From: Lytechinus pictus
Lineage: Eukaryota
Reading direction: 5' to 3'
Assembly (NCBI RefSeq): GCF_037042905.1
Contig: NC_087245.1
Location: 9,486,001 to 9,550,000, forward strand
DNA length: 64,000 nucleotides
Shown: positions 18,472-59,700 of the stretch, piece after piece
Position numbering within the stretch: position 1 is the first letter of the stretch
How the letters are laid out: every line of letters starts with the position of its first letter
Made by a program: the position numbers and the translations under genes
Notes under the pieces: model-generated
The model's database searches: none
The model's input: only the letters and a program-made list of their open reading frames with translations
What the model was told of the DNA's origin: nothing

Positions 18472-18650
18472 GTGACATTTCATGCACAAAAAACAATCCG
18501 AAAATTGGGTTTCTGCCGCATTTTAGATCTAACATTACTGCTAATACGTTGTCTTTACATACGGGCCAACAACACTTCAGTCTATGTATTGGTGAGTGGA
18601 GCCAACGCAGTTCAGCGGAACAACCAATATACAGAGACTGCTTTTGGTCT
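18472..18650 (+). mobile_element. Older, partial copy of the TAGAC/9-bp-TSD element family
   Basis: Aligns by eye with 19203-19384 and ends TTTTGGTCTA; no matching other end or TSD found. Confidence 0.7.
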
Positions 18651-19131
18651 ACTCGATTTGTAACTGTGCTATCATGGCTATGGACTATTCTAGGTATAAC
18701 ATTGTCTCAGCCAGTCAGCCATGAAGCAGAGGCTTGACTGGGAACCGCTGCACCTGTGCCGGAAGGTTAGTCGGTAACAACCTTGTGCGAGGCGCTTAAT
18801 TGCGGGTAGCCTAGCCATTCCAGTACGATAAGTCCGGTTGGATAGCTGCATTCCCATCTCGACCAACTAAAACTGCTACAAAGTATTCGTTCATCCCAGA
18901 CTAGAATATATTCCCTCTAGTAGCTCTACCCCAAATCAAGAGCACAGACTTTCAAGCAGAACGTACTTCAAATCAGACTACACAAAGCAAAGCAACAGTT
19001 CTCGAATTCTCTCTAATCTAGTCTGAGTCAGCTCAGTCCTCTGTGGCTGTGCCATCAATCAACATCTGCGCACTTCCTGCATGGTTGAACGTTGGCTCCC
19101 ACTGACTGTGCATGTGGGGCATTGCATTGGG

Positions 19132-19384
19132 TAGACAGGAATAACCGTCGTTTCTGGGGATTTATTCAACAATTTCTGACATTTTACTATAATCCTCATA
19201 ATGTGACATTTTATGTACATAAAACCGATCGGAAAATCGGGTTTCCACTGTTAGATCTAACGTAACTGCTAAAATACGTTGTCTGTACGTACGGGCCTCC
19301 AAGCTCTTCAGTCTATGTATTGGTGAGTGAGCCAACGCAGTTCAGCAGAACAACCAAAATACAGAGACTGAAGCTTTTGGTCTA
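19132..19384 (+). mobile_element. Non-autonomous DNA transposon, TAGAC...GTCTA termini, 9-bp TSD (copy X1, 253 bp)
   Basis: TSD TGCATTGGG at 19123-19131 and 19385-19393. Confidence 0.88.
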
Positions 19385-19570
19385 TGCATTGGGCAGTATA
19401 CCCACTGCACAGAAGAAGAAGTCTTACCCAGCCAGGCAATGGCCATGCAACAGTCATGCAAGGAAGAGGGGAGAGGCAGTCAGTGCGCAGCGTCGTGGTC
19501 AGTGATGGTGGCAGCAGCAGAGTCAGGAGCCCACAGCCTCAGCCACTCACACGTATTGCGAGGTTAGTAT

Positions 19571-20241
19571 TAGACCAAAAGCTTCAGTCTCTGTATTTTG
19601 GTTGTTCCGCTGAACTACGTTGGCTCCACTCACCAATACATAGACTGAAGAGCTTGGAGGCCCGTACGTACAGCCAACGTATTAAGTGAACTAACGTTTT
19701 ATAGGTCGCGATTTAAAACTGTTTTTAAGCGAAATTTACAGTTTCATGGTTTCAATTATCAGGGAAATTTAAATAACTTATGTAATTGCGTACCTTGGAC
19801 AGAAGTTATTGAAAAAAATCCTCTGGATGATTGAGAAATCTTTCATCTAAGACATTTTCACCTGAGCTGAGGGTTTTTCTTGCAAGTTGGCATCTTGAAT
19901 GACGTCAATATTAACTTTTTAATGTCTCGATATATTGAATGTCGTCTGCTACCTGTGATGGTAGCGATGTTTCGGTACGCTCGCGTATGGAGCAGATCGT
20001 ATAATATCGAAAGCAATATCGATATCATATTCGTGATTGTTGACGCCCTCTCCGTTCTAGAGTCTAAATTCGATGTGTAAAATTACATCAAACTTTGGAC
20101 TGTGAATTGACAAAAGGGAGGGAGTGAAAACACATGCGAGCCCACACGAACACTCTACCGTCGGTAAATCTAAATGGGGATTACAGTAAAATGTCAGAAA
20201 TTGTTGAATAAATCCCCAGAAACGACGGTTATTCCTGTCTA
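19571..20241 (-). mobile_element. Same family, copy X2 (671 bp, opposite orientation, unique interior)
   Basis: TSD GGTTAGTAT at 19562-19570 and 20242-20250; both end modules are reverse complements of the X1 ends. Confidence 0.88.
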
Positions 20242-21252
20242 GGTTAGTATTAGTAATACTAGTAGTATACTAACCTCGCACCACGAACCGCGTTTGGCAG
20301 TGGATTTCTAACTAGTGGGTCACGCGTGCTGGGATCTCACTTCTTGGGCCCACAACACTCGACTTCTATTGCTTGAATTTTCTGTGCGCGGCGGCATGTA
20401 ATGAACCCTTGGGTGGCCTCAGCCAGCCTCAGGGCGGGGAGCTCCGTCGCGCCGCCGGCCGCGGCGCGCGGCGGCCTCTCTGCCTAGCCCTGGCCTAGGC
20501 AAGGTGACCAGTGCAGTGACTCGTGGCTGACGAAATTTAACCTTGCTTGTGTATCTACGGCCGTTTCTTTACAAGATCAGATCTAGATAAATCTTTGACT
20601 TGGCTCTACTTGTACTTACTTATTCATTCGTTTGATTTACCTCCGTCCGAGTCCGTATACACTGACTAACGTAACTAACGATTTGTTGAAAGAAATTCCT
20701 GTCGCGATTGGTGTTTGTTTATAGACAGCAACGGTTGCACAACGCATGCGCAATGACCTTCGGGACCTTATGGGGGAAATCCCTGTTCTCATCTCTGAAT
20801 CAGGAATGGAGGGTATTTCCAGCCAGGGATAGGCTGCTAGGCAGGAAGACTTACCAGACCCAAGCCAAGCCCAAGGCGAGCTGTGCTGTCGTATTGTTTG
20901 TGATATCACGTCTTTCACGATCCATGGTTTTTAATGACGTTCCTGCATAGATCTAGACATATTATTGGCAGCCAGACTGAATTCTGTTTTTTTTTCTTCA
21001 AAATTCAACTTTCAAGTAGGCCTACCGGCGGTATGGACATTTATTTTTATGATGGCGTCATGAGTGAGTGGTCAAATCTTCTTCTTTTAATTCTTAAAAT
21101 CTTATTTTGTTCTGACTTTTGACAGTGACAGTCTGTGTCACTCTCGTCTCAGTGTGTTAGTTAACTTAACCTGCCCATGGCTTTGGCCTTGCCTTGGCAG
21201 ATTTGTCTTACAAATTTACATTTGTGGAATATGGATGAGTTGATCTGAGACT

Positions 21253-21378
21253 TAGACCAAAAGCTTCAGTCTCTGACTGTATTTTGGTTGTTCCGCTGAA
21301 CTGCATTGGCTCACTCACCATAGTAAAATGTCAGAAATTGTTGAATAAATCCCCAGAAACGACGGTTATTCCTGTCTA
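21253..21378 (-). mobile_element. Same family, copy X3 (126 bp, ends only)
   Basis: TSD TCTGAGACT at 21244-21252 and 21379-21387. Confidence 0.88.
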
Positions 21379-21599
21379 TCTGAGACTTAGCGGGGATCGA
21401 CATCTTTTGATGTGTACTTTATACTCTATGTTTTTATGTCTTAATTGTCTATGAATGATCTCGACCAAAAGCTTCGGTCTCTGTTATGTTGGTTGTTCAG
21501 CTGAACTCCGTTGGCTTCACTCACCAAATACAGAGACCGAAGTTCTAGCGCGATCTGTACAGGGGACTCAATGGCCATATGTTTATGTAGGCCTACTTA

Positions 21600-21641
21600 T
21601 GATCGGATAAAACGGGGAAGTGAATTTGCGCGACAGCCGAG
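21600..21641 (+). other. Candidate non-coding first exon of the caspase gene (start uncertain)
   Basis: Consensus donor GAG|GTAAGT at 21641/21642 in a CpG-containing context with a GGAAGTG motif; plausible acceptors at about 24147-24155 precede the ATG exon. Confidence 0.5.
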
Positions 21642-21652
21642 GTAAGTCACTA

Positions 21653-22625
21653 TTTTTGTCTCACCTGCATAGCAGAGTGAGACTATAGGCGCCGCTTTTC
21701 CGACGGCGACGGCGGCGGCGGCGGCGGCGACGGCGGCGTCAACACCAAATCTTAACCTGAGGTTAAGTTTTTGAAATGACAGCATAACTTAGAAAGTATA
21801 TGGACCTAGTTCATGAAACTTGGCCATAAGGTTAATCAAGTATTACTGAACATCCTGCCTGAGTTTCATGTCACATGACCAAGGTCAAAGGTCATTTAGG
21901 GTCAATGAACTTAGACCATGTTGGGGGAATCAACATCAAAATCTTAACCTAAGGTTAAGTTTTTGAAATGTCATCATAACTTAGAAAATATATGGACCTA
22001 GTTCATGAAACTTATACATAAGGTTAATCAAGTATCACTGAACATCCTGCATGAGTTTCACATCACATGACCAAGGTCAAAGGTCATTTAGGGTCAATGA
22101 ACTTTGGCCGAATTGGGGGTATCTGTTGAATTACCATCATAACTTTGAAAGTTTATGGATCTGATTCATGAAACTTGGACATAATAGTAATCAAGTATTA
22201 CTGAACATCCTGTGCAAGTTTCAGGTCACATGATCAAGGTCAAAGGTCATTTAGGGTCAATGAACTTTGGCCAAATTGGGGTATTTGTTGAATTACAGCC
22301 ATAAATTTGAAAGTGTGTTGGTCTAGTTCATAAAACTTGGACATAATAGTAATCAAGTATCACTGAACATCCTGTGCGAGTTTCAGGTCACATGATCAAG
22401 GTCAAAGGTCATGTAAGGTCAAAGAACTTTGGCCACGTTGGGGGTATTTGTTGAATTGCCATCATATCTCTATAAGTGTATTGGTCTAGTTCATAAAACG
22501 TGGAAATAAGAGTAACCAAGTATCACTGAACATCTTGTGCGAGTTATAGTAGTTTTCAAAATCAGCACTGCTGCTATATTGAATCGCGTGATGCAGGTGA
22601 GACGGCCAGAGGCATTCCACTTGTT
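21653..22625 (+). mobile_element. Helentron-associated / DINE-1-like non-autonomous element with central tandem repeats (copy 1)
   Basis: Subterminal IR GTCTCACCTGCAT (21658) / ATGCAGGTGAGAC (22591); 5' partial IR GTCTCAC..GTGAGAC; (GGC/GAC)n microsatellite; five 160-190 bp central repeats; T-rich flanks and no TSD. Confidence 0.8.
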
Positions 22626-24225
22626 GTTCTTTTTAACTTGATTTTTCTCCGTTTTTTGGCAATTAATGCCAAGAGGGAATATTAATTTGCATTTTGGTCG
22701 GGTTAATTTTCAAAATTTTTATTCATTAAAGACAAAAATTGAAGAGCCCCGATGGGGGGATTTTGCATTGCAAGTCCCCTAATGGTGGCTGCACGCTAGC
22801 GAGCCGTCTGTGTATGAGGAGAAATTTAAAAAAAAAAAAAAAAAGTTAAAAAACTCCTCGAAACAGACGGCTGCCAGCTGTCTATGAATGATCATACTTA
22901 CAACAAACATCTCACTAGAAAAATGTTTATGATTATTTATGAATATGATCAACTATTTGAGCATGTTGAGCAAATTAAAAAAATTATCATTAAGTTCACT
23001 CACACACATGCGAGGTTAGTATGCTATAGTATAACTTATAAGTTGACATTTTCACAGTTTAGTCTATACAAAATCAACTATAATCATGAATACCCAACTG
23101 AAGGCAAGACTGACACAGTGTCACACATATTATACTTTTGGAAGAAGATTGAGCTTGGACAAAAGCTAGACCTGGAAACTTGGCTGCAGCTTTCTGCATT
23201 TTTCCAGTACATCCGGTATTTTAATTAAGGTAGGAAAGAGTTCCATATGCACCCCCCACCAAAAATAACACAAGATTGTTGAAACTTCCAGTTCATTCAC
23301 TTCAGATTTTTCTATCATTTTTTTTTTACTGTTGCTTACCTTAGACTTAGTTGGGACTCAAACTCACCTCGTTTTATTTGTAGTCAAGACCTCTTCCCGC
23401 TATGCTAGCGAGAAGCGCTGATACCGAAATGGGTATTTTAACGATTATCAGCCGATAGTTTTACTAATCTAGACTCACAGACCCTTTACTGACTAAATAA
23501 ACCGATGTCTATGGACAATTACACGCACTAGATCCTGCTCGAAATTTGATGGAATAAAGCCATATTTTGGTTACCTAGAGCGAAGTTCGTGCAGGCTCCA
23601 CTCCACTTCACTACCGCTACACTACACTCCACCTACCCGAACTTCGAGACGGTGAACTCGATGGGAAATCATGTTTATTGTAAAAATTAAAGAAAAATAA
23701 TAAAACGAGAAAGATAAACAACTTAATATCTTACTCTTCACCCGTATTTCACTCCGTATCCATCCTCCGGTTTTCCTCAAAATGTGTGATTTTGGGCCAG
23801 TATCTTTTTCCTCACACGTATTATTCACGGCTGATTTCAAAACATCGCATGCGATCGGTTTGACCTGCGACCGATCGCGATTGCCCTGAGCTTTGTACGT
23901 TGCTATTTTGACACCTGTGACATGATCACAAGAACGGTGTGACATAATGTGCACCACTCGTATTAAGGTCGAGCAGTACTGTACTTGTAATCATTCCGCA
24001 TACTGTGCCAAAATCAGTGCTATTTTGGTCATGATTAATGCAGATAATCATTTTCAGTTAAAAGATTTTTAAGTGGATAATTGTCATCTTTAATAAGGAA
24101 ATAGATGATGTATGTCATGTTCTCTTTTCCATTTCTACCTATTTAGCCCTTTTAGAACGCTGAGAGGACACAAAAAAGACATTTATTTGAAAATTTCATC
24201 TAGTGACTGAATTCCAGATCCAGCC

Positions 24226-27200
24226 ATGGCCTTTCAAACCAGTTACAGTGACAGTGCACTTAGTTCTGATGTTGAAAAGGATGCAAACCCTGGTGCAAAC
24301 TCTATTAAATACCGGACTCTACTGAAGGAAATTGACAATGGATTAGGAGCAAGAGATATGGAGAAGCTGAAGTACTTATGCCAAGACTTGGGTGTTGCCC
24401 CACGGAAATTTGAGAATATGAATAGGGGTATCTACTTGTTTACAGAATTGGAAAAACTTGCATTGGTCACAGCAGATGACATTTCATTGCTGGTACTCCT
24501 GATGCAAGCAATCAGTCGCTATGACCTGGTGAAAAAACTGAAGTCATGGAGCAGCAAGGAAGGAAAGTTGGCCCACATGTTAAGTTCTTACAGGTGAATG
24601 AGTTTTTTGCAGTTTATGTTTACAGTGGGGATAGTATCAGATGAAAACTATCATTGAAATATTCTGAATTCTGAGCAAATTATTTTGAGAATGTTTGTTA
24701 CATTCAAAATTCTCTCTTTCTCATGAATATACAGACAAGGGGTAATGACAAGAATTCTCATGATTAATTTTATCATATTTCAGTCCACCTTCATTTTGCA
24801 ATCTCAATCTTTATTAAAGTACAATCCAAGCAAATATTACATTTTTTATTCTACTTTCATTCATATTTTACCTGCAAGGTTCTCCCATAGTGAATAAAAA
24901 CAGTTCGCTCTGGGTGCAAGGGGGGAGGGGGTTGCAGCAGTTGAATTGTGGACAGGTGCCCTGGCTGAGTGGTCTAAAAAGCTGGACTAGACAATTGAAA
25001 GTCCCGGTGTCTGTGCCCTTGAACAGTGCATTTAATCAATAAGTTCTCTTTTTATCTTGGATTATTATAATGCTGTATGCATTCTTGGTAACTATGTGTG
25101 TAGTTGTAAAAAAAATCACAACACCCTCTAGCAGATTTTTCGTGTAAAATCAGAAACAAAATGTAATTTGTAAAACACATTTTCATGTCATATCCTCCAC
25201 ATAATTACTGTTTTAAGGCATACCGGTACACATTCATATAATAATTTAGTAAATAAGTGAAATAGTGATAGCCACATTTTGGGTAGTTATCACAGCAAAA
25301 AAAAATTTGAAGTCATGAATTAAGCCCCTTGTTTGTTTTATGGTGTTTGCGTTTCTAGGAGATTGATGCTAAGGATATCTGACAGTCTGAGTCGAGACGA
25401 GAGAGACCAATTTAAATTTTATCTCAGTGGAGGTGAAATTCCAATTCCTGTAGCAGCCATTGAGGAATGCACGACACTCTTACAGGTGACAGTTAGAAAG
25501 AAAAATAAACTGAAGTATGTAATTGAATCAATTTTTAACAAATGGCTTGTAAAAGATTCCTCATTTTAGTCTACAGGTACAAATGATAAATAATGGCTAG
25601 AAAACGTACTATTTTACACAAAAATAAGAAATGCCTGATGATTATCTGTTTACTTATTGCTGATGTTCCATTGCTGTCACTCATTTGTTTATGTCATAGA
25701 TCAATATCATTTGACAACAGATGTTCACTGCTTCATACCTGATTTTTTTTTAAATAAAATTTGATGGATAATATTTACTCTAATTTGTTGGAAAACTTGA
25801 GTATTTGGTTTTAACAAATTAGATCATTTATATGGTTTCTCAGGGATGATTTTTAATTTTTTTTATTATTTAGATATTACATTGATTGAATGTAAACATA
25901 AAACTCAGATCCTGGTCATTTTCAAAATGTATGCTACTATGATTTCAAGTTTATTTGAGCCATAATAATGAATTCTTTTTATTCCCTTGGTAGCTCTTTG
26001 TACTAATGGAGAAATACACATTAATTGGCCCGAGAGATCTTGAATACTTCACATCAATCATGCAGTCTATTGGAAACATAGCCATTGTTAAAGAAATTGA
26101 ACAGTATTTTGGTAAGCTTTTGTTTCGCATGAATTATAAAAGAAATGAAAAAAAATTATTGAGGGACTCATTTTTTGTCTCACCTGCATAGCAGAGTGAG
26201 ACTATAGGCGCCGCTTTTCCGACGGCGACGGCGGCGGCGGCGACGGCGGCGACGGCGACGGCGGCGTCAACACCAAATCTTAACCTGAGGTTAAGTTTTT
26301 GAAATGACAGCATAACTTAGAAAGTATATGGACCTAGTTCATGAAACTTGGCCATAAGGTTAATCAAGTATTACTGAACATCCTGCCTGAGTTTCATGTC
26401 ACATGACCAAGGTCAAAGGTCATTTAGGGTCAATGAACTTAGACCATGTTCGGGGAATCAACATCAAAATCTTAACCTAAGGTTAAGTTTTTGAAATGTC
26501 ATCATAACTTAGAAAATATATGGACCTAGTTCATGAAACTTATACATAAGGTTAATCAAGTATCACTGAACATCCTTCATGAGTTTCACATCACATGACC
26601 AAGGTCAAAGGTCATTTAGGGTCAATGAACTTTGGCCGAATTGGGGGTATCTGTTGAATTACCATCATAACTTTGAAAGTTTATGGATCTGATTCATGAA
26701 ACTTGGACATAATAGTAATCAAGTATTACTGAACATCCTGTGCAAGTTTCAGGTCACATGATCAAGGTCAAAGGTCATTTAGGGTCAATGAACTTTGGCC
26801 AAATTGGGGTATTTGTTGAATTACAGCCATAAATTTGAAAGTGTGTTGGTCTAGTTCATAAAACTTGGACATAATAGTAATCAAGTATCACTGAACATCC
26901 TGTGCGAGTTTCAGGTCACATGATCAAGATCAAAGGTCATGTAAGGTCAAAGAACTTTGGCCACGTTGGGGGTATTTGTTGAATTGCCATCATATCTCTA
27001 TAAGTGTATTGGTCTAGTTCATAAAACGTGGAAATAAGAGTAACCAAGTATCACTGAACATCTTGTGCGAGTTATAGTAGTTTTCAAAATCAGCACTGCT
27101 GCTATATTGAATCGCGTGATGCAGGTGAGACGGCCAGAGGCATTCCACTTGTTTAATTTTGAAAGGAGCAATAAAATCTCTCCTAAAACTTGAAGGGGAG

Positions 27201-50725: not shown

Positions 50726-51747
50726 TTAAGCCTTAAGTCGGCATGTATGCAGGTATTTGCTGCACTCCGCCAACTAGCTGTACCCTCTTCTCCCTCTCCC
50801 TCCCCCTCCCCCTCCCCCTCTCTATTCTATAAGGTAATCTCTTCCGCACACACACACACTCATGTGGGTGTTTTAATGTAATGTTTTAAGATATAACCCG
50901 GCATATATATAACAAGTATACACACTAAATAATCATGATAATAATGATAACATTTTTTTTGTCATTAATTACAATTTTGATGATAACAATAATAGAAATA
51001 AACGATGATGATATCATGATGATATATATAGTCCCTGCATGACCAAATTGTCTTTTCTCATTATTTTCTTGTTATTGATATTGAATTAAACGTTCAGAAA
51101 CTATTGCAAACAGACCAGTGGAGAAACAAAAAATCCAGGATAAAACAGACTGACATAATTATGTTTATGTTTTTAGACACAACAATCTTTTGTTTTTAAT
51201 TTAGGCCCTATACCCCTCCCCGCAACCAAGCGAACTGGTATAGCTCTTTTAGTTTAACTTATTCATAACTTATTAGCACCCTTTTGAATATCAATTTATT
51301 CAGGTTCATGGAACTACAGAGAAAGGGAGGTAAGCATGGAAGCCTGATAAGAATCCTCAAAATGCTAATTTTCAGGTCATTTTTTTCTTCAAAACTTTTA
51401 GCTCGCGCTTTGGCTAACATTATTGGTGTAGTCCATATGACATGTGTGAAAAGGTGTATTTACCACCCCCCCCCCCCCCTTTCTCCTATGTTATTTCTAC
51501 AGCCCTTTCTTTCCGACCCTTTTGTAAATTCTTAGAGGCCTTTTCATTGGCGCCGCAGCCGTCCTACCACTTGCACCCATTTCTACCACCAGAATGCCCA
51601 GCCACGCCCCTTCCACGGCGCCAGACCATTGAACCTTACAATGTACACGTGTACTATGAACAGTGAGTCGCCCAGCAGATACCGGTAATCTCCCCAACGA
51701 CAGCGACAAAGACAAAGCCTACTTGCGAAAAACAAAACTGTGTAAAA

Positions 51748-54700
51748 ATGGCTTTTACAGCTTGCTGTATATTAATGGTGGCTTTGATAGCTGCAGTTTC
51801 TGGAGAAGTGAATATAAATGTTCTTTTTAAGCCTGAAGATTGCACGAGATCTGTGCAGTCAGGGGATTACTTGACAGTAACCTATGTGGCATTCCTCCCC
51901 GAAGAATCGGGCAACGAACGCTTCGACACATCGTGAGTAGCCGTATTTATGTTAACCTTCCCATGTTAGGTCTATTTGTTGTTTTTCCCCTTCCGTCCAC
52001 AGCATATAGGCAAGACTAATCTAGTTCCAATGATATGTATCCTCCACTTGCGAAATTGATATAAAAATGTATTCAACTTCAAGGTAGAGAAAGTTGGATT
52101 GGACTTTTGGAGTCAGTGGCGTAACTACGGGGGGCATGGGGGGGCACGTGCCCCCCCAATCGGCTGACAAAAAAAAAAAAAAAAAAAAAAACGGGGAAAA
52201 GGAGAAAAAGAGGGAGAAAGGAAGAGAAACGTAGTGGGAAAAAAGACATTATTGTTCATTATAATGTTATATTATTTCATAATAATATGTTATGTTATAT
52301 TACATAAGAAACATTTTTCATAACTTAATGAAACATAATTTGCTCAGGGCCTATGTTTTCATTGCTCCTGATGCTCGCATTGTCTGTTTACCAAGATATA
52401 TAACCCTGATAAAAACTAAAACCTCCCGTTTTCAAGTCAATATATACCAAACTGCCAAATATATTTCCTCGCACTTCGAGTTATTGTTTTATGTACAATA
52501 GTATGCTTCTTTTTCATGACTAAAGTGATTGCCCCATTTTAAGGTCTTAATATAAAACATTTCCTGTCCGTGCTTACGTTAGCAGTAGCGGATTGGTGAA
52601 ATATGTCTGCTCTCAATGAATTCCTAGAATCAGTCCTTAAAATGTTCCTTTTTCTGATCTGAATATCAAAAATTTTCACCTCGCGCTTCGCGCTCGCACC
52701 GTTTGGTTAGTGAACTACGTATGGTCTTCGTGAATTCCTACAAACAAGCCTTAAAATGCCCCTCTTCAGGTCTGAATTTCCTAAATTTTCAGCTCGTGCT
52801 TCGCGCTCGCAAGATTTGATTAGTGAGATGGGTATGTTAATCATGATTACAAGTGCTTTATGTGCATATGTTTAGATGTAATTCTAACAAAATCAGCAAG
52901 CGCTTATTGGCACTCGCATTAGATGACTATGGTGAGATGTGTATACTCTTAACGGATTCCTAAAATATAGTCCTTAAAATCTTCCTGTTTGGGGTCAATA
53001 TTTACAAAAATTTCAGCTCGCGCTTCGCGCTTGCATTATTTAGCGAGACAGGTACGTATCATGATTACAAAAGAATTTTATAATGTCCTTTTTTAGGTCT
53101 GAATATCAAAAATTTTAAGCTCGCGCTTCGCGCTCGCATTATTTGACCAGTGAGATACATATCCGTTTAATGGCACTGTCCTTAAAATGTCTCTATTAGG
53201 TCAGTATACCTGGCAACTGGGCGCGCTGCGCTCACTAAGTGACTCAAAATTTTTGCTCGTGCCCCCCCAATGCCGTGACCCACGGTACGCCACTGTTTGG
53301 AGTACTAGTATTACTATTATTATCAACACTCTCTACTAGCTGGGCTCAATAGTAACACACAACGCTAAACTCGCACAGAGCTCTTGCAAATCAATTACTG
53401 TGTCACAGAATTGTGATATAAGAAATGCATTCAAAATTGTGGGTTTACTGAAAAAAAATTATCGGCGCAGTATGTACGTTGCCTAACAGCTGTCGGACAA
53501 CACTCAAATTGTAAAAGGAACATCTGGCCAGTGACGAAACTTCTATGAGGTGCTCTTCAATTTTCTTCTAGACCTAGAATGACCTTACTCAGCAGTCAAC
53601 AACCATGATCCCTTTTTATCACTGTATTATCATTGTCAATTTTGTCATTATTTTATAAGATCTCTTTTGGTTTCTTTACTTTCAGGGACAACACGGGACC
53701 TGTTCACTTTCGCCTAAATGATCCTGAAAGTACTGCCATGCAAGGATGGCACCAGGGCTTAGAGGGAGCTTGCGTGAGGGAGAAGAGAGAAGTTTTGATT
53801 CCTGCCGGAGAGCTTACCATGAACCATCGATTACCAAGTGAGTATGACCTGTAAATTTTTTTTATTTCTGCTCAACTCAGGTGATGGATTTACACTCCAC
53901 TACACTTCACTACCGCAACGCTACGTAGTTCAGTGGTAGTGTAGAGTAGTTGAGCATACACGAACCATCACTTGAGGTAATTTCAGCTGGGACTTGAACA
54001 TCTGACAACTGAACATTAAAAGAGTGATTCTGTGGATCTATGCATTCATTCAAAATAAAGATAAGTATGTCATAATCAATAATAAACCAGTTGTCAAATC
54101 AGATACTGGGAATAAGGATTATACATGTAACTGATGGCTGTCAATTATAGATATTTATGCCAGCTGGATTCATTGTTTTCTCTTATGATTTTGTTTTTGT
54201 AGTAACTTAAGAGCTGTTTGACACATCAACTTCAGACGCAGTCCAATTATACATATATATGTGAGTGTCTGATCTGATTAGTTTTAGGGATATCAACATC
54301 CAAGGGCAAATACCACAAAGGTCATTATGTAGCCTACATTAGAATAACTGAAGAATCATTTTAGAGATCAGCTTCAAACGTTGCCCAGGTATACATACAG
54401 GATTGAAGATCTATTTGGATTTAGGGGTCACTTATTAGCCAAATATACTTGATTTGCTTATTCAATTAAGATGTAGGCTTATATGCTGATATGATGTATT
54501 TTTGTCTTTAATCTAGACACCAAACCTCCACCAGAAGGAAAAGATGTTGGTTATCGTTTTGAAGTGCGAAACATCAAAGATACACCTCCAGCAGAGAACC
54601 TGTTTAAGAAGATGGATTTTGATGAAAACAAACAGATCTCAAAAGATGAGGTTTGTACTTCATATATCATGCGGTTTCTATTCCATGTTATGTGTGCTGC

Positions 54701-55683
54701 TATCAGTTGTTGGTATGCTATAGAATCTATGTAGTGTTCCTTAGCTCTGAATTTCCATTCACTATTTCCTTAGATAAAAATTTTGACTAACATCAGCTTC
54801 AAGTCATTAAGTTTTAACGATAGTTTGTTTGAACATATGTTCATGATAGTGTTTATTGTAGACATTCAAAGGCTGTAAGAGTCAGGGTTTGTTGAAGATC
54901 ATAAGTATGGTCACCTATAAGATGTATGATCTCCCTTATAGTTGTGGACCAGCGTGATTGAATGCAATTGCCCTTCAACAGTGCTATGTTATGACTTACA
55001 ATGACTGGTATTCTGCACTTGTTGCTCAAGCTTGCTATTTAGTTCATTTGCTATTCAAGTACATGTATCTTGGAAGTTTGATGTCATTTCATAATCACTT
55101 GCATGCAAAATTGCCCACTCTGGTAATGGTAATGACTATTTTGGTGGAATCTATTGAGGTTTAGGTTATGGCTGTATATAGTTCAATTCCATAGTGACAT
55201 CATGGCAGCAGTGGGATGCAAATTTCATATATACCTTGTGATGGTGGAGGACCAGTATCTTTCAATCGTGTACATAGTTGAACAATGCTGTCTGCCACAA
55301 GATGGCATTATGCCATTAACAGAAATGCATATTTATCACCACCCCCCCCCCCCCCATTAAATTCATTTGAAGCTAATATTTAAGATTATAAATAAAAACT
55401 TGCACTATCATTGGTGATTCTACTCATATTTTTATGATTGAATCAGTACAAGTCACAAAACGTCCCTTTTATTGGAATTATAGCTGTTTCAAGTAAGCTT
55501 CTCTCTGCTTTTTGGTCCTTTCAGATGAAGGCTTATCTAAGCATGCAGGGCCTTGGGGGAATGAGGGAAGACGAAACTCTGGATGAAGCCATTAATAATA
55601 TTTTTGATAACAAAGACCATGACCGAAGCAATTCTTTGTCATCTAAAGAGTTCTTTGGAAACAATGCCCATGATGAGTTATAG
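51748..55683 (+). CDS. ER-luminal FKBP7/FKBP14-like peptidyl-prolyl isomerase with 2 EF-hands, isoform A (209 aa, ends HDEL)
   Basis: Exons 51748-51932, 53686-53837, 54517-54650 and 55525-55683. Signal peptide MAFTACCILMVALIAAVSG; KPEDC...GD...V.Y...RFDTS; GWHQGLEGACVREKR; EF1 DFDENKQISKDE; EF2 DHDRSNSLSSKE; HDEL-stop. Confidence 0.85.
52114..53295. mobile_element. Non-autonomous hAT element with internal tandem repeats, FKBP intron 1
   Basis: TIR CAGTGGCGTA / TACGCCACTG; 8-bp TSD TTTGGAGT (52106-52113, 53296-53303); repeated AATTTTCAGCTCGCGCTTCGCGCTCGCA units. Confidence 0.92.
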
Positions 55684-56206
55684 GGTATGTGTTTGTTAAA
55701 TGGTTTATATTTAAATGCTTGCTCAATTATATCTGGTGCAGTTTGATGTTCTTAATCTGCTGGGAAAAGTTGGTACTTGGTAGAAACTTACACATACTTA
55801 ATCACTAACTCTGTCATTCTTCTGTCTATGGGAAGTTATGTTCTAGTGGAATTGTATACAGTCATCACGTGACATTTACCTGAAATTTTTAAAGGTCTTT
55901 TTTTTTTACTTCTCTTTTCCAATATCTCTGATAAACCATTCTAGATAGCTGACTAGATATGCAAATTATCCACCTTACATTGTCATATATCATGTGACGT
56001 GGTTCAAGATCATTTAAAAATAGCAGTCATAGGCTTTGAGTGCAAACCTGCCAATATTATTTGGTTTAAACAGGGAAGTGGGAGGTTATTTAGAATAACA
56101 TTTTAACAGGTGTTTTTCACATTTTAGCCAAGACTTGATAAACTAGATTCTTTTTGAGAGTGTTTATTTCTATGTACTGTGATTGAATTTAAATTTCAGT
56201 TGCTTA

Positions 56207-56369
56207 TGGCGCAGTCACATTTCCCCTACGGAGGCTGTATGGTGAATCGACAACAGCCGTTTTAACATATTTGTACTCACTACATCTATGTGGTTTGATT
56301 AAAAAATAAAATAAAACAGCTGTTTTTTACTTACCGTGCGGGCACCGCAGGGGAAATGTGACTGTATCA
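56207..56369. mobile_element. PIF/Harbinger-like MITE (163 bp)
   Basis: CAGTCACATTTCCCCT.CGG / CCG.AGGGGAAATGTGACTG arms; TTA at 56204-56206 and 56370-56372. Confidence 0.8.
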
Positions 56370-56632
56370 TTAGTTATCTGAATTTCAAATATTAAGAAAT
56401 TACAATGGAAGTGGTTTCCTATTCTTTTAATTTGAATTAAACAGAATACAATAACCAAGGTATTGTATGAAGGTATATTTGATACAGTCAGATATAAATT
56501 ATTGTAAAGTGCAATGAAATGTTAATGTAATGTGCTAGTGCTATATAAAAGTAAGTTTGATTATTATCAGTATAATGAAGCAATATTACCAAGATTCTTT
56601 CTGCATTTTGTATGTATTTCCATATGATACAG

Positions 56633-56788
56633 ATTAAAAGATATATGGAGGAGTCTGGAATCGGAGGGGTAGAGAAGTTTGAGACTCACAAGGAAGCTAT
56701 CGATCACATGTTCAATAAGATGGATAAAGACAAAAATGGAGCTATTAGCCATGATGAGTTTCCAGGACCAAAGCATGATGAGTTCTAG
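56633..56788 (+). CDS. Alternative terminal exon of the FKBP7/14-like gene, isoform B (208 aa, ends HDEF)
   Basis: Pyrimidine tract plus CAG acceptor at 56630-56632, phase 0 like the 54650 donor. Translates IKRYMEESGIGGVEKFETHKEAIDHMFNKMDKDKNGAISHDEFPGPKHDEF-stop. This frame is missing from the ORF track. Confidence 0.9.
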   Translation: MKRYMEESGIGGVEKFETHKEAIDHMFNKMDKDKNGAISHDEFPGPKHDEF

Positions 56789-59700
56789 GATCTGGTCCTT
56801 GTTGTTCCATACAGCGTTTATTAATGTTACTCATGACTTGATACATTCCTGGAGCATGTTTTCAGGTGCTAAGCCAGCTACATAGAGATATTCCAGTTAC
56901 CATAAGAAAGGATCACCAGTCGTTCATAACTTCATTTGTAACTTACAAATAGCTTTATGAAACATCCACCAGGAGCTAGGTCAGATGTCTGTTTTATGTT
57001 AGCTTTTAAAGGGATGATGGATAGAACTTATCAAGTCGTTGCTCTGTGTATGAAATATCTCATATCGCTTCTCTAGCTTTTGAATTTTGCTCCTGCGACA
57101 ATTCCTTCCATAAAAAATCTGTTAAAAGACAAAGATTAAACCTATCTTTCAAATATTGAGTAATCCATGTAGTCAAACCAAAACTCCTATTACAACCATC
57201 ACCATAACCTTTATTCCATGAGAGATTAAAAATGGACCATTTATTTTCTTCTCGTTCTCTTTTTCCAATTTGTTGATTTTTTCTTCACCTTCTTTGTCAT
57301 CTTCTCGTCCTTCTTTTAGCCTTTTCACAGTTGTAATTTGTAAGTACCAGTAAAAGGTCATTTGAGATGAGCTTTTCAAAGACACTGACATATAAAGCAT
57401 TCAATATTTGATGATTATTCATGTGTTCCTTTTAAAACATTCTTTTCATCACATCCACTGAGAAGTAATTGTTCACAATTGGCATTATACAGTACCGTAG
57501 CCCACATGATAGTCAAAAAGCAGACAATACCACAAAGTCCAAACTTGATCATTGACATACTTTGATAGTCACCTGGTATTTCTTTCATAGAATTTGATTT
57601 TGAATTCAACAGGATGCTATGTCTGGAAAGCTTAGGCAAGATCTTCATTTGAAAGTGTTAGTGCTCATCATAACGAAAAAAAGGAAATGTCATTTGATAA
57701 TACGATTGGCTTATACCTTTTTTATATAATGATGTCAAATATTCGAAATTCACTGTAGTTGGTCTTCTTTTATGTCTGTGTACATTCAAGTCATATCCTG
57801 CTTAATTACCATGTTCCAATAATATTTATATAGGATTGATTCAATCCTTTCATTACCTTAAATAATAAGGTATCATCAGAGCCTAAAGCAACATGGTATT
57901 AAGATTAAATTTTCTTAATTTATTATATTGGACAGACACTGCTTATGAACGATACCAATCTCTTTGTATATCATAAAGTTATTGTTATTTTGAATTCTTT
58001 TGACTTTTTAACCTTATTTTATTAAACAAATGCTGCAAGTGATTCAACAGGTGATCACAACCTAGCAATATTCTTTTTAATCAAATAAGTTTACAATCAT
58101 ATGTTATTATAAAAGGTCACAAGGTTTTGATCGGCAATGTGTAAGGTTGCAAGAGTTGAGATCAGTCTTGTATCATTTTTAATTGTAATCAGTTATAAGT
58201 TTTCATATAGTGGGATCCACTTTGTATTATTTTGTTGCACTATGGGGATATCTAACAAAAAACATACTATTATTGTATTTTTCTTAAATTACTTATTAGC
58301 AATATACCTTGAATTTCAATTAGTATTAATGAAAGTAGGCTGAACATGATGGTTTTTTTTTAGAACACTCATGAATTCATATGAAAAGGAGGGGAAAAGC
58401 CTGTGTGAGATGTACAGTAGTTTGGTGTTTCTAGTATTGTAAAGTGCATGTAGAGAGAGATTGGTTCAATGTTTCCTGAAATTAAATGATAAATTTTTTT
58501 TACACAATGATATACTTTATATATTTAAAACTGCAAAGCCAAGAAAAAAATATTCAAGTACACCACCCCCCCCCCCTCCCCCATCATGAAAAAAAAATAG
58601 AAATGATTTTGGATACTGCTTAGAGGGTACTTGCTTATATTAAAATTCATTGTGAAATCACCATATTTTCAAGAGAAGTTGTGTAAAAATAATGAGTGAT
58701 GAAAATCTTAATGCATTACTGGATGTCATGTTTCATGTGCCTTTGAGTTGTAAAATGGTAAGTGAAGAAATGTTTGAAAATAGATTAAGTTATTGAGTGT
58801 TTCAGTTGTTTAACTAAATTTTTGTTCATGTTAATGATATACATTTGCACGATATATACTGTTTATCAAAATCAGTGGTACTTCTTTTCTCTCAATTTGA
58901 TTTATGACTCCAAGTCTTTCATTGCTATAAATCATGAAAATGCAAAATTGGTGTAGCATTTCTGATTGTGAAATTATTGCTATCACCTTGAGTTGTTGAA
59001 TGACCTTTGTAGGGTTGTTTATATTGTTTGTATAAAGTCTTTGAACATTGTAGTATGCATACATGTATTATGCAAATTTTTACATATTAAGTACTGATGC
59101 TAGTATTTATTTTAGTTCCCAAATATTTGTTACATATAGCTAGAAGTTCAGAATAAAGAAGTATAACTTTGAATACTTGTTTGAATGCAATAATTCTTGG
59201 CTTTTTGTTAAATGTTGATGATATTTATACATTAGTGATATGAATTTCACAATAATGCAGTTATATACCCAAGGATAGTGCCAGAGTTGGGGAGATGGCA
59301 ATTATGCCCCAAATAATTTTTCAACTTATTAAAGAAATTAAAGGAAGGAAATGGTATGGAGAAAAGTACAGAAAAGAAATGGTTTGGTCTTGGAACTACA
59401 ATATAGTAACTCTTAGGTTTGCTTGAAGGTCACTTTCACCCCCCCCCCTCTTCTCTCTTCCTCTCTCTCTCTCTCTCTTTCTCTATGTTTCTGTATTTTC
59501 TTTGCTCGCCTCTCGTGAGAAAGAGCAAGATTTGCTGCAGATCAATTTATCGATTAATAATTAAAATACATGAAAATTATACATTACAGGTTTGAACGTA
59601 ACAATAAATACATAAATGGTTGGTTGACCCAATTATTGAAAACATTGTCCTGGGTCCTGTGTCATAAAACTTGTTACGATACCAATTTGCAATAACAGTT

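What the first reader, a model, noticed from the sequence alone, without database searches (positions are those of the whole stretch)
55525..56788. FKBP7/14-like gene with two duplicated, mutually exclusive terminal exons: swappable EF-hand 2 plus ER-retention signal (HDEL vs HDEF)
Seen: after the phase-0 donor at 54650 there are two intact phase-0 last exons of near-equal size, 55525-55683 (52 aa, EF loop DHDRSNSLSSKE, HDEL) and 56633-56788 (51 aa, EF loop DKDKNGAISHDE, HDEF). They align residue for residue (M/I-K-x-Y...G-L/I-GG...EAI..(I/M)F...D.D....S..EF.G..HDE) yet are highly diverged, with no stops. Known: FKBP7/14 proteins normally have one such C-terminus, EF-hands mediate Ca binding and dimerisation, and KDEL variants differ in retrieval strength. 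Inference: the distal exon has the canonical loop (Gly at position 6) and looks ancestral, the proximal exon is a retained duplicate, and last-exon choice could tune Ca sensing and ER retention versus secretion.
Basis: partly seen in the sequence, partly recalled or inferred. Interest (0 to 1): 0.82.

Follow-up and report, generated by a model that had tools for sequence, protein, structure and literature searches.

The report
Stop-carrying cassette exon swaps FKBP14 tail
A sea urchin ER-resident FKBP14-like gene makes two proteins with different last 50 residues (second calcium-binding EF-hand plus ER-retrieval tag HDEL or HDEF) by including or skipping a duplicated exon that ends in its own stop codon; both forms are real, conserved and already in RefSeq, but the exon is a cassette, not a terminal exon.

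Summary

RNA reads show both 54650>55525 and 54650>56633. The proximal exon (55525-55684) is therefore a 160-nt cassette exon. Its TAG lies 1 nt before its own GT donor.
- Included: the protein ends in HDEL and exon 4b becomes 3'UTR.
- Skipped: the protein ends in HDEF.

There is almost no coverage downstream of 4a, so I see no sign of a separate polyA site.

The window is Lytechinus pictus. The two spliced products equal RefSeq XP_063951723.1 (X1) and XP_054751214.1 (X2). The same pair is annotated in L. variegatus and Strongylocentrotus purpuratus, and all three keep the 'TAG G|GTATGT' donor.

Both exons are under purifying selection between Lytechinus and Strongylocentrotus: dN/dS 0.13 for 4a and 0.10 for 4b. 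The dead-duplicate reading is refuted.

Differences in Ca binding or ER retention remain inference. Published vertebrate KDEL-receptor work shows HDEF retains less well than HDEL.

This is a solid, modestly interesting new member of a known kind. The scan had not noted it before.

The parts
51707..51932 (+). Exon 1: 5'UTR, ATG at 51748, signal-peptide-like hydrophobic N-terminus and start of the FKBP domain. The donor is after 51932.
   Evidence: An RNA contig of X1 starts at 51707. The joint 51932>53686 is GT..AG, with 21 reads in X24. Translation matches RefSeq P0151/P0155.
53686..53837 (+). Exon 2: core of the FKBP_C domain.
   Evidence: Joints 51932>53686 and 53837>54517. Pfam PF00254 E 4.2e-4 on this exon alone.
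54517..54650 (+). Exon 3: end of the FKBP domain and EF-hand 1 (loop DFDENKQISKDE). Its phase-0 donor is shared by both isoforms.
   Evidence: Joints 54650>55525 and 54650>56633, listed as 54648 with cut +2. Weak EF-hand Pfam hits.
55525..55684 (+). Exon 4a: a 160-nt cassette exon coding 52 aa (non-canonical EF loop DHDRSNSLSSKE, tail HDEL). TAG is at 55681-55683, followed by one more exon base.
   Evidence: Joints 54650>55525 (X24 10 reads; X1 depth 33) and 55684>56633 (X24 13 reads; X1 depth 33). Conserved in L. variegatus and S. purpuratus with dN/dS 0.13. No Pfam EF-hand hit. Held in RNA contigs of several studies.
55685..55690 (+). 5' splice site GTATGT of exon 4a, starting 2 nt after the stop codon ends.
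   Evidence: GT..AG joint 55684>56633. 'TAGG|GTATGTG' is identical in L. pictus, L. variegatus and S. purpuratus.
56633..56788 (+). Coding part of exon 4b: 51 aa (canonical EF loop DKDKNGAISHDE, tail HDEF) and TAG at 56786-56788. It is translated only when 4a is skipped and is 3'UTR when 4a is included.
   Evidence: Joint 54650>56633 (X24 17 reads; X1 depth 124). Pfam EF-hand_1 E 1.5e-6. dN/dS 0.10 against S. purpuratus.
56789..57450 (+). Shared 3'UTR, which continues beyond the stretch laid. It contains a short dispersed repeat at about 56897-56975.
   Evidence: X1 contigs cover 56632-56895 and 56897-57450 and beyond with 0 mismatches. Many partly fitting reads lie at 56897-56975.

Best explanation
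The gene is the Lytechinus pictus FKBP14-like ER-lumenal prolyl isomerase: signal peptide, FKBP domain, two EF-hands and a C-terminal retrieval tetrapeptide. Its last coding exon was duplicated in tandem. The upstream copy (4a) kept its stop codon and has a 5' splice site directly behind it (TAG G|GTATGT). It therefore behaves as a cassette exon.

When 4a is included, translation stops at its TAG and the protein is isoform X1: 209 aa, EF loop DHDRSNSLSSKE, tail HDEL. Exon 4b is then untranslated. Because the stop lies 1 nt before the last exon junction, the mRNA should escape EJC-dependent nonsense-mediated decay. When 4a is skipped, exon 3 joins 4b and the protein is isoform X2: 208 aa, canonical EF loop DKDKNGAISHDE, tail HDEF. 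Both mRNAs share one 3'UTR and polyA site.

Shown here: the gene architecture, use of all three junctions in two species, conservation of both exons and of the donor in three sea urchins, and purifying selection on both exons.

Inferred: the swap changes the properties of EF-hand 2 (Ca affinity or dimer interface) and the efficiency of KDEL-receptor retrieval. HDEL would give tighter ER residence. HDEF would be leakier, allowing more post-ER or secreted protein.
For: - Junctions 54650>55525, 55684>56633 and 54650>56633 are all GT..AG. Raw reads in X24 (L. variegatus) number 10, 13 and 17. Contigs of X1 (L. pictus, 0 mismatches) have depths 33, 33 and 124. Depth at 55679-56076 is about 0.
- The spliced products are identical to RefSeq XP_063951723.1 (X1) and XP_054751214.1 (X2). 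The same X1/X2 pair exists in L. variegatus and S. purpuratus.
- Both exons, in the same order, and the post-stop donor are conserved in loci L001 and L002.
- dN/dS between L. pictus and S. purpuratus is 0.13 for 4a (Fisher p 1.3e-4), 0.10 for 4b (p 7.6e-7) and 0.17 for exons 1-3.
- A more diverged 4a-type ORF ending in HDEL (P0005) exists in another, unidentified sample.
- Exon 4a is held in RNA contigs of several studies in both species and is absent from others.
- AlphaFold2 models of both isoforms keep a helix-loop-helix in the swapped module, with pLDDT 79-89 for 4a and 70-88 for 4b. The best fold and sequence match is human FKBP14, 4MSP.
- HDEF binds the KDEL receptor (PDB 7OXE), but with lower affinity and less efficient retention than HDEL (PMC7617889).
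Against: - Isoform proportions come from one raw-read run and one contig set. Stage or tissue regulation was not tested.
- Two rRNA-depleted L. pictus runs (X21, X22) gave almost no reads on the gene.
- No protein-level evidence exists for either isoform.
- Exon 4a has no Pfam EF-hand hit, so it may not bind Ca at all.
- The measured HDEL/HDEF affinity difference is small (18 against 23 uM) and comes from vertebrate receptors.
- The NMD argument rests on the vertebrate 50-55-nt rule.
Confidence: 0.85

Rival explanations
1. One reading: two true alternative last exons, each with its own cleavage/polyadenylation site and mutually exclusive at the mRNA level.
For: Both 54650>55525 and 54650>56633 junctions exist. 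ATTAAA/AATAAA hexamers lie at 56298-56305, downstream of 4a.
Against: The junction 55684>56633 has as many reads (13) as 54650>55525 (10). Depth directly after 4a is 0.08-0.34 in X24. The donor GTATGT after the stop is conserved in three species.
Confidence: 0.05
2. Exon 4a inclusion is non-productive: splicing noise or a regulatory 'poison' exon that lowers output of the HDEF protein. On this view the 4a peptide has no function of its own.
For: The exon carries an in-frame stop. The 4a EF loop is non-canonical and is not recognised by Pfam. Inclusion is the minor form, about 21-40%.
Against: The 52-codon ORF is kept open with dN/dS 0.13 across Lytechinus and Strongylocentrotus, as tight as the rest of the gene. 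The retrieval motif is kept as HDEL or HEEL. The stop is 1 nt from the junction, the position least likely to trigger NMD. The loop DHD[RK]SNSLS is conserved even in the diverged P0005.
Confidence: 0.08
3. One of the two exons is a decaying duplicate, a pseudo-exon.
For: The copies are highly diverged, only 39% identical.
Against: Both are intact, spliced and under purifying selection in three species.
Confidence: 0.02

Closest known systems
Human FKBP14 (FKBP22; PDB 4MSP) and FKBP7 (FKBP23): ER-lumenal FKBPs with two EF-hands and a C-terminal HDEL
   Same: Same domain order: signal peptide, FKBP_C, EF-hand 1, EF-hand 2, H-D-E-x tail. phmmer E 1.5e-25 to 4MSP over residues 19-207. 4MSP is also the top Foldseek hit.
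   Different: The human structure carries one C-terminal module. The sea urchin gene has two alternative ones. The urchin FKBP domain lacks the usual 'LGYG' 80s-loop motif (A3 consensus). The default (skipping) isoform ends in HDEF, not HDEL.
Alternative splicing of tandemly duplicated exons (mutually exclusive homologous exons; general phenomenon, from my own knowledge: Kondrashov and Koonin 2001; Letunic, Copley and Bork 2002)
   Same: Adjacent paralogous exons of near-equal length and the same acceptor phase, giving proteins that differ by one homologous module.
   Different: Exclusivity is not enforced at the splicing level, since both exons can sit in one mRNA. It is enforced by the stop codon at the end of the upstream copy.
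Splice isoforms that add, remove or replace a KDEL-type signal, for example C. elegans crld-1a/b (alternative last exons, TM domains against KDEL; PMC6245729) and human P3H1 a/b/c (KDEL only in isoform a; PMC9956579)
   Same: The C-terminal ER-retrieval signal is decided by alternative splicing at the 3' end of the gene.
   Different: In those cases the signal is present or absent. Here a strong signal (HDEL) is exchanged for a weaker one (HDEF) together with a paralogous EF-hand.
CREC-family EF-hand proteins with HDEF/HEEF tails (calumenin HDEF, Cab45 HEEF; from my own knowledge), and KDEL-receptor work on HDEF (PMC7617889)
   Same: A lumenal EF-hand protein ending in HDEF. HDEF is a bona fide but less efficient KDEL-receptor ligand.
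   Different: A different protein family. No homology beyond the EF-hand is claimed.
Glandiceps talaboti (hemichordate) FKBP2-like isoforms X1/X2
   Same: The isoforms diverge at the same exon boundary. A proximal non-canonical exon (tail HSEL) and a distal canonical exon (tail HDEL) each carry EF-hand 2 and the tail.
   Different: There is no GT directly after the proximal stop. The proximal exon is shorter (43 aa) and not evidently orthologous to urchin 4a. Ptychodera flava lacks it, so it is probably an independent duplication.

Membership tests
FKBP7/FKBP14-type ER-lumenal FKBP | FKBP_C peptidyl-prolyl isomerase domain | tested here: met
   PF00254 is on record for the full proteins. It scores E 4.2e-4 on exon 2 alone. 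4MSP E 1.5e-25 and 4DIP E 1e-11. Foldseek TMt 0.80 to 4DIP.
FKBP7/FKBP14-type ER-lumenal FKBP | N-terminal signal peptide | tested here: inconclusive
   The hydrophobic N-terminus MAFTACCILMVALIAAVSG is modelled as a helix at residues 2-16. No signal-peptide predictor was available.
FKBP7/FKBP14-type ER-lumenal FKBP | Two C-terminal EF-hand motifs | tested here: met
   This holds for isoform X2: EF1 in exon 3 (weak Pfam hit) and EF2 in 4b (EF-hand_1 E 1.5e-6). In isoform X1, EF2 gets no Pfam hit. It does keep D1, D3, S5, S9 and E12 of the loop, and the model shows a helix-loop-helix.
FKBP7/FKBP14-type ER-lumenal FKBP | C-terminal H/K-D-E-L retrieval tetrapeptide | tested here: met
   X1 ends in HDEL (HEEL in S. 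purpuratus). X2 ends in HDEF, which lies outside the classical motif but is a KDEL-receptor ligand.
FKBP7/FKBP14-type ER-lumenal FKBP | PPIase activity, Ca binding and ER localisation | not testable with these tools
   These need biochemistry and imaging.
Alternative (mutually exclusive) terminal exons | Each exon ends a transcript at its own polyA site, and the two never occur in one mRNA | tested here: not met
   Junction 55684>56633 has 13 reads in X24 and appears in an X1 contig. Depth after 4a is about 0.
Alternatively spliced tandem exon duplicates | Adjacent exons that are homologous, of similar length and in the same phase | tested here: met
   52 against 51 codons, both acceptors phase 0, 39% identity, E 8e-9.
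Alternatively spliced tandem exon duplicates | Both copies used alternatively and kept by selection | tested here: met
   Junction reads. dN/dS 0.13 and 0.10.
NMD-targeting poison cassette exon | Premature stop more than 50-55 nt upstream of the last exon junction | tested here: not met
   The TAG ends at 55683 and the exon ends at 55684, so the stop is 1 nt from the junction.

The most novel reading that the evidence does not exclude
Sea urchins use regulated inclusion of exon 4a as a switch. It would couple a change of Ca-sensing EF-hand 2 to a change from a leaky (HDEF) to a tight (HDEL) retrieval signal, setting how much of this FKBP stays in the ER and how much travels on or is secreted, for example during skeletogenic matrix secretion. 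The same solution may have arisen more than once in Ambulacraria: in echinoids, in Glandiceps, and possibly in the unidentified species of L004.
Probability: 0.25. Interest if true: 0.55.

Novelty: new member of a known kind. Interest (0 to 1): 0.35.

Why it matters
This is a clean natural example in which exon duplication plus a stop codon placed 1 nt before a splice donor makes two protein tails from one transcript end. The difference falls on a Ca-binding module and on the strength of the ER-retrieval signal.

It gives a testable system, with sea urchin embryos and morpholino splice blocking, for how KDEL-variant strength is used physiologically.

It also corrects the automatic reading of 'alternative last exons'. 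The two mRNAs share their 3'UTR and differ only by a cassette.

It is not a new principle, and the isoforms already sit in RefSeq as predicted models.

Tried and rejected
1. Dead duplicate: rejected by dN/dS and junction reads.
2. Separate polyA after 4a: rejected by the 55684>56633 junction and the lack of depth.
3. Dating the duplication with a tree of 15 C-terminal exon peptides: unresolved, with no starred branch.
5. Loci for Apostichopus P0159 and Saccoglossus P0158: not on record.
6. A 4a-specific protein search found only the S. purpuratus and Lytechinus X1 models.
7. Runs X21 and X22 gave almost no coverage of the gene, so they say nothing about isoform use.
8. The inverted-repeat scan of the 3'UTR repeat found only a weak 14-nt pair.
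9. No paper links FKBP14 with sea urchin.
10. The scan's own notes hold nothing on this feature.

Full report
OBSERVATION

Each is open and ends in a stop: HDEL* and HDEF*. They align end to end with one single-residue gap and 39% identity. tblastn of one against the other gives E 8e-9. The upstream exon 54519-54650 reads ...NLFKKMDFDENKQISKDE and ends in phase 0 before GTTTGT.

GENE AND SPECIES

The window's exons are:
- exon 1: 51707-51932, with the ATG at 51748
- exon 2: 53686-53837
- exon 3: 54517-54650
- exon 4a: 55525-55684
- exon 4b: 56633 onward

A profile search with the two peptides found full-length sea urchin proteins. The product that includes 4a is identical to RefSeq XP_063951723.1, 'FKBP14-like isoform X1 [Lytechinus pictus]' (209 aa). 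The product that skips 4a is identical to XP_054751214.1, 'isoform X2' (208 aa). The window is therefore L. pictus.

The same X1/X2 pair is annotated in L. variegatus and in Strongylocentrotus purpuratus, where X1 ends in HEEL. The nearest solved structure is human FKBP14/FKBP22, 4MSP. It matches by sequence (E 1.5e-25) and by fold.

WHAT THE RNA SHOWS

I laid two raw-read L. pictus runs, one raw-read L. variegatus run (X24) and one set of L. pictus RNA contigs (X1, zero mismatches) on 51500-57450. The constitutive introns are confirmed: 51932>53686 and 53837>54517.

Three joints leave or enter the duplicated exons, all GT..AG after the stated cut shifts:

| Joint | X24 reads | X1 contig depth |
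|---|---|---|
| 54650>55525 | 10 | 33 |
| 54650>56633 | 17 | 124 |
| 55684>56633 | 13 | 33 |

The third joint changes the picture. Exon 4a has its own donor: TAG ends at 55683, 55684 is G, and GTATGT starts at 55685. It is spliced to exon 4b about as often as it is entered. Depth just downstream of 4a (55679-56076) is essentially zero.

So 4a is a 160-nt cassette exon, not a terminal exon. Inclusion is roughly 40% in X24 and roughly 21% by contig depth in X1. Exon 4a is present in RNA contigs from several independent studies of both species and absent from others. The two rRNA-depleted L. pictus runs hardly covered the gene and are uninformative.

MECHANISM

- With 4a included, the ribosome stops at the TAG of 4a, the protein ends in HDEL, and the 4b coding sequence becomes 3'UTR.
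- With 4a skipped, exon 3 joins 4b in frame and the protein ends in HDEF.

The two tails are thus mutually exclusive in the protein, although both exons can share one mRNA. The stop lies 1 nt before the last exon junction. By the established 50-55-nt rule for EJC-dependent NMD (vertebrate-derived; an inference here), the inclusion mRNA should be stable.

Both copies end in TAG followed by G: TAGGGTATG in 4a and TAGGATCTG in 4b. This fits a duplication that included the stop codon.

CONSERVATION

The loci of S. purpuratus (L001) and L. variegatus (L002) hold both exons in the same order, with the string TAGGGTATGTG after 4a in all three species.

Nei-Gojobori dN/dS, L. pictus against S. purpuratus:

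| Exons | dN | dS | dN/dS | Fisher p |
|---|---|---|---|---|
| 4a | 0.058 | 0.44 | 0.13 | 1.3e-4 |
| 4b | 0.105 | 1.04 | 0.10 | 7.6e-7 |
| 1-3 | 0.111 | 0.657 | 0.17 | 9.8e-13 |

Both exons are as constrained as the rest of the gene. This refutes a dead duplicate and argues against a purely regulatory poison exon.

A more diverged 4a-type ORF (P0005...DHDKSNSLSASEFFGDRRHDEL) from an unidentified sample suggests the exon is older than the Lytechinus-Strongylocentrotus split. I take that split to be about 50 My from my own knowledge.

WHICH COPY IS ANCESTRAL

I compared each copy with the single exons of a sea cucumber, three hemichordates and three unidentified HDEF-type exons.
- The first half of 4a (MKAYLSMQGLGG..ETLD.AI.NIF) is as close or closer to them: 11-17 identities of 27, against 7-11 for 4b. 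Only Glandiceps X1 ties, at 11 each.
- The loop and tail of 4b (D.D..G.ISH.EF.GPKHDE.) are closer: 13-16 identities of 24, against 8-11 for 4a.

Each copy keeps a different ancestral half. A tree of these roughly 50-residue pieces is unresolved.

WHAT DIFFERS FUNCTIONALLY (INFERENCE)

- Exon 4b carries a canonical EF loop, DKDKNGAISHDE (Pfam EF-hand_1 E 1.5e-6).
- Exon 4a gets no Pfam EF-hand hit at E of 1 or below.
- The 4a loop, DHDRSNSLSSKE, still has the usual ligand positions (D1, D3, S5, S9, E12) and a hydrophobic position 8. Asn replaces Gly at position 6.
- The core of that loop is conserved in S. purpuratus and P0005.
- AlphaFold2 models of both isoforms keep the helix-loop-helix, with similar confidence: blocks of 79-89 for 4a and 70-88 for 4b.

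For the tails, published work on the vertebrate KDEL receptor shows that HDEF is bound (PDB 7OXE). Its affinity is lower (23 against 18 uM), and HDEF reporters are retained less efficiently than HDEL ones (PMC7617889). A difference in ER residence between X1 and X2 is therefore plausible, but it is untested in urchins.

RELATED CASES SEEN

- The hemichordate Glandiceps talaboti has X1/X2 models that diverge at the same boundary. The proximal exon ends in HSEL and the distal one in HDEL.
- Ptychodera flava has one last exon and a short intron, so the Glandiceps copy is probably independent.
- A short contig of an unidentified species (L004) has an HDEF exon followed 320 nt later by a second copy with the 4a-like LDxAxxNxxxNxDHD signature.
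- Lepidopteran FKBP14 X1 models carry a duplicated EF-hand-1 segment.

Exon duplication in the EF-hand part of this family therefore seems recurrent.

COMPARISON WITH WHAT IS KNOWN, AND NOVELTY

Alternative use of tandemly duplicated exons is a well-known class. Splice isoforms that gain or lose KDEL are also known: crld-1 (PMC6245729) and P3H1 (PMC9956579).

Both isoforms here are already predicted RefSeq models in three species. I found no paper on them: there were 0 hits for FKBP14 with sea urchin.

This work adds the following:
- The proximal exon is a stop-carrying cassette exon with a conserved donor right behind the stop.
- Both tails are under purifying selection.
- A strong retrieval motif is exchanged for a weak one together with a paralogous EF-hand.

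I file this as a new member of a known kind, of moderate interest.

LIMITS

- Only one read-laying run was allowed, so stage and tissue regulation are untested.
- The isoform proportions rest on one raw-read run and one contig set.
- There are no protein-level data.
- The age of the duplication is unresolved.

Noticed in passing
window 52100-53300 (intron 1) and 56897-56975 (3'UTR): Very many RNA reads fit here only in part, with loose ends and 'opposite strands' joints. Contig depth reaches about 6600. These look like dispersed repeat or transposon families transcribed elsewhere, not signal from this gene.
   Followed up: partly
L005 12941-13069 and 15202-15354 (Glandiceps talaboti): A hemichordate FKBP2-like gene has annotated isoforms X1/X2 that diverge at the same exon boundary. 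The proximal alternative exon ends in HSEL and the distal canonical exon in HDEL. Ptychodera flava (L006) has a single last exon.
   Followed up: partly
L004 638-790 and 1112-1198 (GCA_013332995.1, species not identified): An HDEF-ending last-exon homologue is followed 320 nt later by a second copy with the 4a-like 'LDxAxxNxxxNxDHD' signature, cut off by the contig end. The order is opposite to that in sea urchins.
   Followed up: partly
proteins P0253/P0233 (Danaus plexippus) and P0202/P0186 (Achroia grisella): Lepidopteran FKBP14 'X1' models carry an extra 22-residue duplicate of the EF-hand-1 segment (…IEIVFRAMDTDGDSELSREEVS…). This suggests another tandem exon duplication in the same family.
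   Followed up: no
window 53686-54580 (FKBP domain, exons 2-3): The sea urchin FKBP domain lacks the near-universal 'LGYG..G' 80s-loop motif of FKBP14 relatives. It reads AGELTMNHRLPNTKPPPEGKDVG instead (A3 consensus). Isomerase activity or ligand binding may be altered.
   Followed up: no
window 55343-55357 and 52186-52215: A 15-nt poly-C run lies in the intron before exon 4a, and an A/G-rich low-complexity run lies in intron 1.
   Followed up: no
window 18472-27153: The scan's notes for this window record a DNA-transposon hotspot and 1-kb direct repeats around a caspase's DED exons. I did not examine them.
   Followed up: no
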